Shown here: positions 3,921-7,581 of the stretch, piece by piece
Layout: the number at the start of each line of letters is the position of its first letter
Numbering within the stretch: the first letter of the stretch is position 1
Assembly: GCF_022045235.1 (NCBI RefSeq)
Contig: NW_027266287.1
Location: forward strand, 3,658,001 to 3,722,000
DNA from: Haliotis cracherodii
Taxonomy: Eukaryota
DNA: 64,000 nucleotides
Direction: 5' to 3'
Notes under the pieces: generated by a model
What the model saw: only the letters and a program-made list of their open reading frames with translations
Database searches by the model: none
What the model was told of the DNA's origin: nothing
Program-made: the position numbers and the translations under genes

Positions 3921-3930
3921 TATATAAAAG
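3921..3930 (+). promoter_or_regulatory. TATA box of the Tyr/Ser-rich secreted protein gene
   Basis: TATATAAAAG 58 bp upstream of an ATG in good context (caaccATGg, 3979); Inr-like TCAGAT ~30 bp downstream of the TATA. Confidence 0.7.
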
Positions 3931-3978
3931 TGTCCATTTCACACTAATTGCAATCAGATGTTTCTGAAATCAACAACC

Positions 3979-6900
3979 ATGGTTTCCCAAGCGTTGATTG
4001 TGGCGTTGCTGTTCACCCTTGCAACGGGCGAGGTTCAGGTCAGTTTCTCTGAAGTCCAGCGGTGAAGAGAGAGAGTGGAGTCTGGGGGTAATGAGAGAGT
4101 GGAGTCTTGGTGTAATGAGAGAGTGGAGTCTGGGTGTAATGAGAGAGTGGAGTCTGGGTGTAATGAGAGAGTGGAGTCTGGGGGTAATGAGAGAGTGGAG
4201 TCTGGGTGTAATGAGAGAGTGGAGTCTGGGTGTAATGAGAGAGTGGAGTCTGGGTGTAATGAGAGAGGGGAGTCTTGGTGTAATGAGAGAGTGGAGTCTG
4301 GGTGTAATGAGAGAGTGGAGTCTTGGTGTAATGAGAGAGTGGAGTCTGGGGGTAATGAGAGAGTGGAGTCTTGGTGTAATGAGAGAGTGGAGTCTGGGGA
4401 TAATGAGAGAGTGGAGTCTGGGGGTAATGAGAGAGTGGAGTCTTGGTGTAATGAGAGAGTGGAGTCTGGGTGTAATGAGGGAGTGGAGTCTTGGTGTTAT
4501 GAGAGAGTGGAGTCTGGGTGTAATGCGTGAGCGGGTATTTGGGATTAAATCCCCTTTGATCAGGACTTCAGGGGTATTGCTGCGTTTTAGCTGAAGATCG
4601 GTAGTTCGACCCCGGCCGCGTCACACCAAAAGATCTGGTACTTGTTGTTACCCTGCCTGGCTAAAACATGGACTGGTCGGCTCGGAGTCAGTATACTGTG
4701 TCTAAGTGGGGTATTCATGGTAAACCGAGGCAATGTATCTCAATGGGCTAGCACTATAAATCTGAATCAGTCTTGTCGTTCTTGTTTTCAGGACAGTAGG
4801 TTTATCAACTCCCTCAAGGACAACTCTCGGCTGAAGAGACAAGCATGTACGTACACTATCGTTAATATTTCACCTGAGATGTAAAATCTTGTGTCCGGCC
4901 TAAAACTACACCTCTGGTGCGTCTGATTGTTCTATTGGTGGTAGACAAGGTTGTGTGCTGAGCCCGTTCCTGTTTCAGCTTTTCATAAATGAATTAGTTT
5001 AAGGTGTTCCTTTTTACACCTATTTGAGTTTATGTATTCACAATAGGCTTAATTGGCCTAAAACGGCTGAAGTCTACACTCGTTGCAACCGTTTTCAACA
5101 TATTTCTTCTTCAAATCTTTGAGGCAAAGAAAATGCCAGTATTCTTGTATTGTGCGGAAGTTTGGGGGTTCGAAAAGGTAGAAACGTTGGATAGGGTACA
5201 AGTGTACGCATGGAAACGTTTTTTTAATCTGAAACTTTCTGCCTCGAACACCACATTGTACGGTGAGTGTGGACGATACCCCATTCATGTATATGCTATG
5301 TTAAAATGTGCAAATTATTGGTTAAATATTTTGACACTGCCCCAGTGTCGTTTACCCAACAATGTTATGATATGATGTGCTTATATGATGAACAAGGTCG
5401 GGTAAATTGGTTTACAAAATTAAGAAATTGTCTGTGAAGGTTAAGATTTGGAAAAATATATGGTTATTTTAAATGCACGGTAGCGAAAAATGGAATTCTC
5501 AATGTGTTTCAGCAACGTGTAAAGGATAACTTCCAACAAATTTGGCACAGTGATTTACTTGCAAGTTAAAAAATGTCCTATCATGCAACATATAAAGTTT
5601 CTATAAATTGTAAAAACAAAAAGTAAATTCAAATTGCTCTTTTTCGTTTTTGTTTACGTTGTCACGACTTGGAGATTGAGCATGGGCATCAATTCAATAC
5701 ACCTTTTAATTTACGAAAATGTAAACTTTGCAACTTAAACTTTATTGAAAGTGAATTGCATTTTCGTTTAGTGTGTCCGACATACGTACAGTTAACACAA
5801 CTAAACTTTAACACAAAGCTTTTTCTTTGACATTACATCCATAAATTTAACATTTTGATGCCATGCCAAGCTCTAACGTAATTACAAATCAAGCAACATA
5901 CAGTAAACTACGGTTATAACGAACTCAAAGGGACCAGTAATTTTAGTTCGTTATAGCCATAGTTCGTTATATGCATATATAGAGCATAACTACAGCAAAT
6001 AGTCGGGACATCTGACATTGTCAGGTGCAGAGTAACAAGATGAGGATGGGTGCAGATTGCTGCATTGGTGAACACGGCTAGGTCATGAAGAAGTTTGCTT
6101 TTGGCTGCTCAGCCCTATTCACCTCTGTACACTACATTCTTCCTAAATTTCAGCTTACGGATCAAGCTACTACTACTCTCCGTCGTCTAGCTACTATGGT
6201 TCACCAAGCTACTACAACTCACCATCGTCTAGCTACTATGGTTACTCCAGCTACTACTACTCACCATCGTCTAGCTACTATGGTTCATCAAGCTACTACT
6301 ACTCACCCTCGTCCAGTTACTATGGTTACTCCAGCTACTATTACTCACCATCGTCTAGCTACTATGGTTACTCAAGCTACTACTACTCCCCCTCGTCCAG
6401 TTACTATGGTTACTCCAGCTACTACTACTCACCATCGTCCAGTTACTATGGTTACTCAAGCTACTACTACTCTCCATCGTCCAGTTACTATGGTTACTCA
6501 AGCTACTACTACTCCCCCTCGTCCAGTTACTATGGTTACTCCAGCTACTTCTACTCACCATCGTCTAGTTACTATGGTTACTCAAGCTACTACTACTCAC
6601 CATCGTCCAGTTACTATGGTTACTCAAGCTACTACTACTCCCCCTCGTCCAGTTACTATGGTTACTCCAGCTACTACTACTCACCATCGTCTAGCTACTA
6701 TGGTTACTCAAGCTACTACTACTCTCCATCGTCCAGTTACTATGGTTACTCTAGCTACTACTACTCCCCCTCGTCCAGTTACTATGGTTACTCCAGCTAC
6801 TACTACTCACCATCGTCCAGTTACTATGGTTACTCAAGCTACTACTACTCTCCATCGTCTAGCTACTATTACGACAATGGAAAAACGCTCACTGGTAAGT

Positions 6901-7581
6901 TACTTGAGTGAGTGAATGAGTTTGGTTTTACGCCGCTTTTAGCAATATTCCATATATATCACGACGGGGAACACCGGAAATACGCATCTCACATTGTACA
7001 CCCACGTTGGGAATCAAACCTGGGTCTTCGGCGTGACGAGCAAACACTTCGGCCACTAGGCTACCCGACCGCGCCAGTAGGTTCCTTGATTACTTGCTTG
7101 TAACTGTCACTACCTTTTGTACTTAGGGTGACAGAGACACTTGTCCCCTTCGATATGCTTGTCCTCGTCTAATGCGCCGCAATTCGCAATGCAGAGTTGT
7201 GTTCCTTGAGAACGCCAGAAACCTATGATTGGGTTCGAATCCAGGTTCGGCAGAGAGAACTTAGATCTGATTTTAATGAGACTGGATCTGCATCACTTGG
7301 GATTGTCGTCCAACACAACCTTGACACATCGTGGTCATTCGTGACCAACTCGTGTTATTCCGGGACAAGCCGAATAGCATCGTGGTATGGTTGAAACGCT
7401 ATAGATCCTGTTAAACCCAAAACTTTCACTCGACACTTTCATTCCAGCTGATGAAAAGGTCCTGATACTCAACTATGTGAACGATGTCGAGAACGAGGCT
7501 GTTGAGGCAAAGAATGCTGCTGAGGAGACGGTTGCGGACATCCAACAACTCATCCAAGTCGCACAGAACCAGCTGAACTAA
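3979..7581 (+). CDS. Secreted Tyr/Ser-rich tandem-repeat protein (~329 aa, 4 exons)
   Basis: Exons 3979-4038 (MVSQALIVALLFTLATGEVQ, signal peptide), 4792-4846 (DSRFINSLKDNSRLKRQA), 6154-6894 (SYGS+17x SYYYSPSSSYYGYS+YDNGKTLT), 7448-7581 (ADEKVLILNYVNDVENEAVEAKNAAEETVADIQQLIQVAQNQLN*). All introns GT-AG, phases 0/1/1 match, no internal stop. Confidence 0.85.
4069..4525. repeat. 24-bp minisatellite (~19 copies) in intron 1
   Basis: Unit atgagagagtggagtctgggtgta; source of spurious MREWSLGV/ESGCNERV ORFs. Confidence 0.95.
4925..5860 (+). mobile_element. Degenerate non-LTR retrotransposon (LINE) RT/C-terminal fragment
   Basis: GRQGCVLSPFLFQLFINEL (RT motif), LYCAEVWG...YGECGRYP, and C-terminal CKLC...ESELHF..VCPTY motif, with stops and frameshifts; lies in intron 2 of the Tyr/Ser gene. 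Confidence 0.8.
6165..6870 (+). repeat. Coding 42-bp tandem repeat, 17 copies (SYYYSPSSSYYGYS)
   Basis: Unit ~agctactactactcaccatcgtctagctactatggttactcc; most differences between copies are synonymous in the Tyr/Ser frame. Confidence 0.92.

What the first reader, a model, noticed from the sequence alone, without database searches (positions are those of the whole stretch)
3921..7581. Hidden gene for a secreted, furin-processed Tyr/Ser block-polymer protein (candidate biomaterial/adhesive precursor)
Seen: four exons splice cleanly into signal peptide - short propeptide ending RLKR - Q-initiated mature chain with 17x SYYYSPSSSYYGYS (6 Tyr, 6 Ser, 1 Pro, 1 Gly; no charge, no Cys) - acidic helical tail; a TATA box lies upstream. 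The ORF track shows only the wrong (Thr-rich) frame. Known: R-X-K-R is the furin consensus; Tyr-rich secreted invertebrate proteins are DOPA-modified or dityrosine cross-linked (mussel foot proteins), Ser/Tyr-rich ones can be phosphorylated (sandcastle-worm Pc3), and YXY motifs cross-link plant extensins. Inference: a structural or adhesive protein (shell periostracum, operculum, pedal glue, egg coat) whose assembly is triggered by propeptide removal. I do not recognise it as a described protein.
Basis: partly seen in the sequence, partly recalled or inferred. Interest (0 to 1): 0.88.

Follow-up and report, generated by a model that had tools for sequence, protein, structure and literature searches.

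The report
Abalone secreted tyrosine-rich repeat protein genes
The window holds an intact, unannotated four-exon gene for a secreted protein that is mostly tyrosine and serine. A previously unnoticed sister gene lies head-to-head beside it. The pair looks like a new abalone-specific family of cross-linkable structural proteins, but expression could not be checked.

Summary
Exons 3979-4038, 4792-4846, 6154-6894 and 7448-7581 (+) join through GT-AG introns in phases 0/1/1 into a 329-codon frame. It reads: signal peptide, 19-residue propeptide ending RLKR, 17 units of SYYYSPSSSYYGYS (12 exact), then a 43-residue acidic tail predicted as one helix.

Three results argue for a real gene:
- Differences among repeat units are 37 synonymous to 12 non-synonymous in the Tyr/Ser frame, against 4:43 and 10:38 in the other forward frames.
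- A chance control finds no other such exon 1 or exon 2 on that strand.
- A diverged paralogue lies head-to-head (first exon at 2227-2156, minus strand). It has the same exon phases, the same KDNxRLKRxA exon end, a different Tyr-rich 26-residue repeat and another helical tail.

Both genes are single copy, and no protein database, Pfam, PDB or paper search found a relative.

Secretion and convertase processing are plausible, and the cleavage site is the one conserved block. The material or adhesive role, the DOPA or phosphoserine chemistry and assembly triggered by propeptide removal are untested.

The scan noted this same stretch once before (s1-832200), not on other DNA.

The parts
3921..3927 (+). 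TATA box (TATATAA) of gene A, 58 nt before the ATG
3979..4038 (+). Gene A exon 1: start codon in AACCATGG context and signal peptide MVSQALIVALLFTLATGEVQ. The likely signal-peptidase site follows A-T-G (my reading by the -3/-1 rule). Ends in phase 0 at donor CAG|GTCAGT.
   Evidence: unique in the genome
4069..4525 (.). 24-bp minisatellite x19 inside intron 1. Not coding in the model; its open frames are artefacts of the repeat.
4792..4846 (+). Gene A exon 2: propeptide DSRFINSLKDNSRLKRQA plus 1 nt (phase 1). It carries the R-L-K-R dibasic site, and its 3' half is conserved in gene B.
   Evidence: unique in the genome
6154..6894 (+). Gene A exon 3: junction Ser codon, then YGS, 17 x 14-residue Tyr/Ser units (42-bp repeat with a 126-bp higher-order pattern), then YDNGKTLT. 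Ends in phase 1 at CTG|GTAAGT.
7448..7581 (+). Gene A exon 4: junction Ala, then DEKVLILNYVNDVENEAVEAKNAAEETVADIQQLIQVAQNQLN and TAA. The 43 residues have 9 acidic and 2 basic side chains and are predicted as one continuous alpha helix.
   Evidence: single copy
2264..2270 (-). TATA box (TATAAAA) of paralogue gene B, 43 nt before its ATG
2156..2227 (-). Gene B exon 1: MKCFLLVASLLALGLVRADDERAE (signal peptide), phase 0, donor GAG|GTAAAT
   Evidence: unique in the genome
134..173 (-). Gene B exon 2: TVEKDNARLKRAA plus 1 nt (phase 1), donor CAT|GTATGT. Exons 3 and 4 lie left of the window, at L015 4001-3438 and 2744-2620 (G000:C24:3654001-3653438 and 3652744-3652620).

Best explanation
Gene A (3979-7581, + strand) is a real, intact, single-copy gene of what is most likely the black abalone. 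It has one paralogue, gene B, which lies head-to-head 1.75 kb away on the minus strand.

Both genes encode small secreted precursors with the same plan:
1. A signal peptide (exon 1).
2. A short charged propeptide ending in the conserved block K-D-N-x-R-L-K-R-x-A (exon 2).
3. A long tyrosine-rich tandem-repeat block, presumably disordered (exon 3).
4. A C-terminal amphipathic helix of about 40 residues (exon 4).

In gene A the block is 17 x SYYYSPSSSYYGYS, uncharged and 40% Tyr. In gene B it is about 7 x TDNTYNPYQYMTTPYPYYQTT[S/T]GYPY, 30% Tyr.

Shown here: the gene structure, the correct reading frame, the paralogy, the helix prediction and the lack of any known relative.

Inferred:
- The precursor enters the secretory pathway and signal peptidase removes about 17 residues.
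- A furin-type or PC-type convertase cuts after RLKR, releasing a mature chain that starts Q-A-S-Y.
- The Tyr-rich block then serves as substrate for oxidative cross-linking (tyrosinase or peroxidase giving DOPA-quinone or dityrosine) or for aromatic self-association.
- The product would be an extracellular structural matrix, such as periostracum or shell framework, radula or jaw, larval shell or pedal secretion.
- The acidic helix would keep the chain soluble or orient it until deposition.

The tissue and the chemistry are unknown.
For: Gene model:
- Four exons with GT-AG introns add up to 990 nt. Splice scores lie at the 94th to 99.9th percentile of the window.
- Among plausible acceptors downstream of exon 3, the one at 7448 gives the longest frame.
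- Chance control: on the + strand the only mini-exon with an acceptor score of 8 or more, a donor score of 6 or more and an open frame is exon 2 itself. The only first exons with TATA, signal-like ATG and donor in both strands are those of genes A and B.

Reading frame:
- Unit-to-unit differences are 37 synonymous to 12 non-synonymous in the Tyr/Ser frame, against 4:43 and 10:38 in the other + frames. In the inner units, six of seven variable columns are third codon positions.
- Gene B shows the same trend: 9:7 against 1:13 and 2:13.

Paralogy:
- Gene B has the same four exons and the same phases 0/1/1.
- The exon 2 alignment KDNSRLKRQA / KDNARLKRAA scores z = 8 against shuffles.
- The DNA motif including the donor occurs exactly twice in 1.18 Gb and never in the reversed control. 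A looser codon-level pattern adds only chance-level hits.
- Flanking intron sequence is not conserved, so the block is kept by selection.
- Two old, diverged copies that both keep intact frames argue for function.

Other points:
- Both tails fold as single helices, with pLDDT 97 and 95.
- All non-repeat exons are unique in the genome.
- Literature: Gly/Tyr-rich mollusc mantle proteins are read as quinone-tanned periostracum or prism proteins (PMC3191542). Tyrosinase is a component of the abalone shell matrix (PMC6003135).
Against:
- No predicted protein in 1.84 billion cluster representatives carries the tail. None of 24-75 aa in the 90%-identity clusters does either.
- Nothing of 135-430 aa matches exon 3 apart from one weak hit of unrelated, low-complexity type. 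Gene B's exon 3 has no hit.
- So no annotated or transcript-derived orthologue is visible in any abalone or other mollusc. That could mean low or very restricted expression, failure to assemble the repeat, or a very young or fast-evolving family.
- None of six motifs from gene A or six from gene B occurs in the 28 supplementary files of the Haliotis laevigata shell proteome.
- Signal-peptide and cleavage calls rest on my reading of sequence features, not on a predictor.
- Repeat-unit differences are not independent events because of the 126-bp higher-order repeat, so the synonymous excess rests on about seven variable columns.
- The antisense frame that shares wobble positions also scores 31:17, but it is broken by stops.
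Confidence: 0.72

Rival explanations
1. The gene family is real but the product differs from the model, or the genes are unexpressed relics. The transcript might end by reading through into intron 3 (giving ...DNGKTLTGKLLE*), use the upstream ATG at 3958, or use other exons.
For: No RNA evidence was obtained. No database protein carries either tail or either repeat exon. The acceptors of exon 4 are the weakest signals in both genes, at 1.89 in A and -0.13 in B. The two tails align only marginally (p about 0.05; BLASTP finds nothing).
Against: Both genes have a strong donor right after the repeat in phase 1, followed by an acceptor that opens a frame of about 41-44 codons. In both cases that frame is predicted as a single helix ending in a stop. 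Two diverged copies keeping the same four-exon frame is not expected of relics.
Confidence: 0.15
2. There is no gene. A 42-bp minisatellite happens to be open in all three forward frames, and the four-exon model was assembled by eye from chance signals.
For: All three + frames of the array are open. Other TAC-type simple repeats in the genome also translate to Tyr-rich strings. No homologue and no transcript-derived protein was found.
Against: The unit differences fall on third codon positions of the Tyr/Ser frame. The chance control finds no comparable exon 1 or exon 2 elsewhere. An adjacent paralogue has the same exon phases, a conserved KDNxRLKRxA block present only twice in 1.18 Gb, a different Tyr-rich repeat and its own TATA box, signal peptide and helix.
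Confidence: 0.06
3. The real product is the single-exon Thr-rich ORF at 6085-6915 (276 aa, ATTTHHRPVTMVTQ repeats), a mucin-like protein.
For: It is the only ATG-initiated ORF over the array in the mechanical list. Its N-terminus, MKKFAFGCSALFTSV, is mildly hydrophobic.
Against: Unit differences are 4 synonymous to 43 non-synonymous in that frame. I saw no TATA box in the roughly 100 nt upstream. Its start lies inside the modelled intron 2. Gene B supports the Tyr frame through its matching splice phases.
Confidence: 0.03

Closest known systems
Mollusc Gly/Tyr-rich matrix and periostracum proteins (KRMP, shematrin, prisilkin-39, Pinctada maxima PM241)
   Same: They are secreted, repetitive, low-complexity, Tyr-rich, fast-evolving and lineage-restricted. 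Their authors read them as substrates for quinone tanning at the mantle edge (PMC3191542; PMC4498902 and PMC4660305 listed).
   Different: No sequence similarity. Here the partner residue is Ser (42%) rather than Gly (7%). There is no Lys-rich basic domain. Instead there is a conserved dibasic propeptide and a C-terminal helix. Neither mantle expression nor presence in shell is shown.
Mussel foot protein 1 and tubeworm cement proteins (Tyr-rich tandem repeats modified to DOPA; Ser-rich ones phosphorylated)
   Same: Short tandem peptide repeats rich in Tyr, Ser, Thr and Pro in a secreted protein. Gene B's Y/P/T unit recalls the mfp-1 decapeptide (my own knowledge; tubeworm proteins in PMC12817120).
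   Different: Those adhesives are strongly basic (Lys-rich) or strongly acidic (phosphoserine). Gene A's block is uncharged. There is no homology, and no modification data exist.
Pif (pearl oyster nacre protein cut at a dibasic RMKR site)
   Same: A mollusc extracellular matrix precursor processed at an R-X-K-R convertase site (my own knowledge, not checked here).
   Different: In Pif the cut separates two large functional halves with VWA and chitin-binding domains. Here it would remove a propeptide of 19 residues (gene A) or 17 (gene B).
FUS-type [G/S]Y[G/S] low-complexity domains and the RNA polymerase II CTD (YSPTSPS)
   Same: Uncharged Ser/Tyr(/Gly/Pro) repeats. The best PDB sequence match of exon 3 is the CTD heptad array (E = 2.3e-5). 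Each unit holds one GYS motif. These domains are known for aromatic-driven self-association (my own knowledge).
   Different: Those domains are nuclear or cytoplasmic parts of large proteins. This chain has a signal peptide and would act outside the cell. The match is compositional, not homologous.
Plant extensins
   Same: Secreted Ser/Pro/Tyr repeat proteins cross-linked through Tyr by peroxidases.
   Different: There are no SPPPP blocks, it is an animal gene, and nothing suggests common descent.

Membership tests
Proprotein-convertase (furin/PC) processed secretory precursors | N-terminal signal peptide | tested here: met
   Both genes have an 11-residue hydrophobic core (Kyte-Doolittle mean 2.85) right after the ATG. 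Small residues sit at -3/-1: A-T-G in gene A and V-R-A in gene B. These are sequence features only; no SignalP-type predictor was available.
Proprotein-convertase (furin/PC) processed secretory precursors | R-X-[K/R]-R motif at the propeptide end | tested here: met
   RLKR is present in both paralogues inside the only conserved block, KDNxRLKRxA.
Proprotein-convertase (furin/PC) processed secretory precursors | Cleavage actually occurs, seen as the mature N-terminus | not testable with these tools
   Needs N-terminal sequencing or proteomics.
Mollusc Gly/Tyr-rich quinone-tanned matrix proteins (KRMP, shematrin, prisilkin-39) | Detectable sequence relationship to a named member | tested here: not met
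   No hit in the protein collections, Pfam or papers.
Mollusc Gly/Tyr-rich quinone-tanned matrix proteins (KRMP, shematrin, prisilkin-39) | Gly-dominated Gly/Tyr composition | tested here: not met
   Gene A block: Ser 42%, Tyr 40%, Gly 7%. Gene B block: Tyr 30%, Thr 23%, Pro 16%, Gly 4%.
Mollusc Gly/Tyr-rich quinone-tanned matrix proteins (KRMP, shematrin, prisilkin-39) | Mantle expression or presence in the shell or periostracum matrix | tested here: inconclusive
   The motifs are absent from the supplements of the H. laevigata shell proteome. That is another species, exact 6-9-mers were searched, and periostracum was not sampled. No RNA data.
DOPA adhesive proteins (mussel foot proteins) | Basic, Lys-rich repeats with Tyr converted to DOPA | tested here: not met
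   The repeat block has no Lys or Arg. DOPA cannot be tested with these tools.
RNA polymerase II CTD heptad repeats | YSPTSPS heptads at the C-terminus of an RPB1 catalytic subunit | tested here: not met
   Only a compositional match to the repeat. The protein has a signal peptide and no RPB1 body.

The most novel reading that the evidence does not exclude
Genes A and B form a new abalone-lineage family of secreted, convertase-processed 'block' proteins. In gene A an uncharged block of about 240 residues, 40% Tyr and 42% Ser, acts as an extracellular counterpart of FUS-like aromatic low-complexity domains, attached to an acidic helix. After the propeptide is removed, the protein would condense or be oxidatively cross-linked into a hard or adhesive biomaterial. 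That would make it a genetically simple new template for tyrosine-based materials.
Probability: 0.3. Interest if true: 0.7.

Novelty: new variant of a known kind. Interest (0 to 1): 0.5.

Why it matters
Molluscs build shells, teeth and glues from fast-evolving secreted repeat proteins that annotation pipelines and short-read assemblies often miss. This pair would add a family with an unusually pure Tyr/Ser composition. It also has a clear modular plan: signal peptide, conserved dibasic propeptide, exchangeable Tyr-rich payload and helical cap.

The two paralogues show that the payload can be swapped while the processing site is retained. This points to the cleavage step as the functionally constrained part.

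If the gene is expressed in a defined secretory tissue, the protein is a compact candidate for studying tyrosine cross-linking or extracellular phase separation, and for biomimetic materials. If it is not expressed, it is only one more orphan low-complexity gene model.

Tried and rejected
- Every search used single exons by reference. The junction codons (Ser and Ala in gene A; Tyr and Ala in gene B) were read by eye.
- Homology searches with no useful result:
  - exon 3 of gene A: one weak low-complexity hit carrying Pfam PF07886, in a 212-aa protein from an ENA source;
  - tail of gene A against 1.84 billion cluster representatives and against the 90%-identity clusters;
  - exon 3 of gene B;
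  - Pfam;
  - ESM Atlas for both repeat exons, best score 0.80, at noise level;
  - PDB by sequence for the tail.
- Genome-wide DNA matches to exon 3 turned out to be ordinary TAC-type simple repeats, not paralogues.
- No further family member was found by exon DNA, exon 2 peptide or degenerate codon pattern.
- No shared promoter motif between the two head-to-head genes beyond the TATA boxes.
- Complex prediction on three copies of the gene A tail gave 'no answer' (score 0.04). This is no evidence for or against self-association, so the coiled-coil idea from the other first-reader note stays untested.
- Motif strings from both genes occur in no searchable paper and not in the H. laevigata shell proteome supplements.
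- An apparent downstream 'gene start' (AAAATGGCGGCG at about 7833) is part of a dispersed repeat with copies nearby. It is not a neighbouring gene.
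Full report
**What is there**

- A TATA box (TATATAA) lies at 3921-3927, 58 nt before an ATG in the context AACCATGG at 3979.
- Exon 1 (3979-4038) encodes MVSQALIVALLFTLATGEVQ.
- Exon 2 (4792-4846) encodes DSRFINSLKDNSRLKRQA plus one base.
- Exon 3 (6154-6894) completes a Ser codon and then encodes 246 residues.
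- Exon 4 (7448-7581) completes an Ala codon, then encodes DEKVLILNYVNDVENEAVEAKNAAEETVADIQQLIQVAQNQLN and a stop.

All three introns are GT-AG, the phases are 0/1/1, and the coding length is 990 nt.

Tandem Repeats Finder reports a 42-bp unit x 16.9 copies. In register there are 17 units, of which 12 are exactly SYYYSPSSSYYGYS. The exon 3 translation is 42% Ser, 40% Tyr, 7% Gly and 7% Pro. Its only charged residues lie in its last seven residues.

The mechanical ORF list shows only the Thr-rich frame (6085-6915), because the Tyr/Ser frame has no ATG inside exon 3.

All searches used single exons by reference.

**Is it more than chance?**

The array is open in all three forward frames, so openness alone means nothing. 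Three other results do carry weight.

1. Repeat-unit differences. Differences among the units are 37 synonymous to 12 non-synonymous in the Tyr/Ser frame, against 4:43 and 10:38 in the other forward frames. In the inner units, six of seven variable columns are third codon positions. The units form a 126-bp higher-order repeat, so these are few independent events, but the direction is clear. The antisense frame that shares the wobble positions scores 31:17 but is broken by stops.
2. Splice signals. With a simple consensus matrix, the six splice sites rank at the 94th to 99.9th percentile of all GT or AG sites in the window. Among plausible acceptors after exon 3, position 7448 gives the longest frame.
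3. Chance control. Over both strands of the 64 kb, exon 2 is the only mini-exon of its quality on the + strand. Only two places combine a TATA box, an ATG followed by a signal-like hydrophobic core, and a donor. One is this gene. The other led to the main new result.

**A head-to-head paralogue (gene B)**

On the minus strand, 1.75 kb from gene A's start, lies a second gene.

- A TATA box (TATAAAA) sits at 2270-2264, followed by an ATG at 2227.
- Exon 1 (2227-2156) encodes MKCFLLVASLLALGLVRADDERAE.
- Exon 2 (173-134) encodes TVEKDNARLKRAA plus one base, followed by GTATGT.

I fetched the DNA left of the window (L015) and found the remaining exons.

- Exon 3 (L015 4001-3438) sits behind the acceptor TTCCTTACAG. 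It encodes about seven copies of TDNTYNPYQYMTTPYPYYQTT[S/T]GYPY, a 78-bp repeat x 6.8 copies.
- Exon 4 (L015 2744-2620) encodes A-GTKAQLVNEVQKLLQEAQDAWSDAQSAADYAKQVKEEFKA and a stop.

The coding length is 801 nt and the phases are 0/1/1, identical to gene A.

The exon 2 ends align as KDNSRLKRQA / KDNARLKRAA, with z = 8 against shuffles. The corresponding DNA motif, including the donor, occurs exactly twice in the 1.18-Gb genome and never in the reversed control. A looser codon-level pattern adds only chance-level hits. Intron sequence beside the block does not align, so the block is conserved against a saturated background.

The signal peptides and tails have diverged. The tails reach p of about 0.05 in a local alignment, and BLASTP finds nothing. 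Both tails are nevertheless predicted with high confidence as single long helices, with pLDDT 97 and 95.

Gene B's repeat units show the same synonymous bias: 9:7 against 1:13 and 2:13.

Two old, diverged copies that both keep intact four-exon frames, the same phases and the same dibasic block are hard to explain unless both are functional genes. All non-repeat exons of both genes are single copy. The other genomic matches to the Tyr/Ser repeat are plain TAC-type simple repeats.

**What is missing**

No predicted protein anywhere carries these sequences:
- the tail of gene A;
- the repeat exons of gene A or gene B.

There is also no Pfam family, no meaningful Atlas neighbour, no PDB relative of the tail and no paper containing the motifs. 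The H. laevigata shell proteome supplements contain none of the motifs I searched, six from each gene.

This absence has more than one reading. It fits an unannotated, lineage-restricted, hard-to-assemble repeat gene. It equally fits low or very restricted expression.

**Organism**

The genome is 1.18 Gb in 80 pieces. This fits the published black abalone assembly of 1.18 Gb in 82 scaffolds, which was released without a gene annotation (PMC9709981). Earlier agents of this scan also call it black abalone. I did not verify the species independently.

**How it most likely works**

Shown:
- the gene structure, the correct frame and the paralogy;
- the modular plan of signal peptide, conserved dibasic propeptide, Tyr-rich repeat payload and helical tail.

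Inferred:
- Entry into the secretory pathway, with signal-peptidase cleavage near A-T-G|E.
- Cleavage after RLKR by a furin-type or PC-type convertase. The site is the only strongly conserved coding block between the paralogues, which supports its use.
- A mature chain starting Q-A-S-Y in gene A and A-A-Y-Y in gene B.
- Use of the Tyr-rich block as a substrate for oxidative cross-linking or aromatic self-association in an extracellular structural matrix.

The last step rests only on analogy. Gly/Tyr-rich mollusc mantle proteins are read as quinone-tanned (PMC3191542), and tyrosinase is a component of the abalone shell matrix (PMC6003135).

The role of the acidic helix is open; it might aid solubility, orientation or self-association. 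A three-copy complex prediction gave no answer, which is no evidence either way.

**Comparison with known things**

The closest known kind is the mollusc secretome of repetitive low-complexity proteins, such as KRMP, shematrin and prisilkin-39. There is no sequence relationship to any of them. The composition is Ser/Tyr rather than Gly/Tyr, and the combination of conserved dibasic propeptide and C-terminal helix is not described for them.

The best PDB sequence match of exon 3 is the RNA polymerase II CTD heptad array (E = 2.3e-5). This is a compositional echo (YSPS...), not homology.

Mussel foot proteins, tubeworm cements, extensins and FUS-type domains are functional analogies only.

**Verdict**

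- The finding is a new, apparently orphan two-gene family within a well-known kind of mollusc gene.
- I put about 0.72 on 'real functional secreted-protein gene with this architecture'. The specific cross-linked-material role is much less certain.
- Interest is moderate. The head-to-head pair with exchanged payloads and a retained processing site is a neat result. However, orphan repeat secretome genes are common in molluscs, and expression is unproven.

Noticed in passing
window 134-2270 (-) and L015 2620-4001 (-) = G000:C24:3652620-3654001: Gene B, a head-to-head paralogue of the finding's gene. It has a TATA box, signal peptide, TVEKDNARLKRAA propeptide exon, about 7 x 26-residue Tyr/Thr/Pro repeat and a helical tail of 41 residues counting the junction Ala, with the same intron phases. 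Most of it lies outside the window.
   Followed up: yes
window 4069-4525: A 24-bp minisatellite (GAGAGAGTGGAGTCTGGGTGTAAT x 19, 93% match) inside intron 1. It produces two long spurious ORFs in the mechanical list.
   Followed up: partly
window 7645-7970: Dispersed repeat just downstream of the stop codon. It carries a CCAAT-like box and AAAATGGCGGCG, which mimics a gene start. Copies at 74-79% identity occur in L014 (7175-7490) and L015 (5122-5431, 6441-6617). Its family was not identified.
   Followed up: partly
window 6156-6893 (+): The 14-residue unit reads like two heptads. Its best PDB sequence match is the RNA polymerase II CTD (YSPTSPS) array, E = 2.3e-5. I read this as compositional convergence.
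   Followed up: partly
window 3958: In-frame upstream ATG (MFLKSTT-MVSQ...) in a weak context, about 30 nt after the TATA box. It could lie at or before the transcription start. If used, it would add a Lys to the start of the signal peptide.
   Followed up: no
window 18439-19545 (-): Intact-looking Tc1/mariner-type transposase ORF of 368 aa. Pfam hits: DDE_3 at 3.9e-13 and HTH_Tnp_Tc3_2 at 4.6e-9.
   Followed up: partly
window 59894-60994 (+): Single-exon rhodopsin-family GPCR ORF of 366 aa (Pfam 7tm_1, E = 2.1e-20).
   Followed up: partly
window 47476-49359 (+): A 627-aa Gln/Ser/Thr-rich open frame with no Pfam match. It may be one large exon of a nuclear low-complexity protein.
   Followed up: no
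window 53746-56445: Long AT-rich minisatellite, open in several frames on both strands (YMYIDNT... and HVHVSIIYV...). I read it as satellite DNA, not a gene.
   Followed up: no
window 22596-23788 (-): Another tandem repeat that is open in three overlapping minus-strand frames (LSCLQVRQVSQLSTGQTGVSVVYRSD... units). Probably a minisatellite.
   Followed up: no
window 37869-38982: Four runs of N (632 bases in all), either masked or assembly gaps.
   Followed up: no
window 5133-5375 (+), inside intron 2: An 80-aa ORF that looked to me like a fragment of a retroelement reverse transcriptase C-terminus. Pfam gave no hit at E <= 0.01, so this is unconfirmed.
   Followed up: partly
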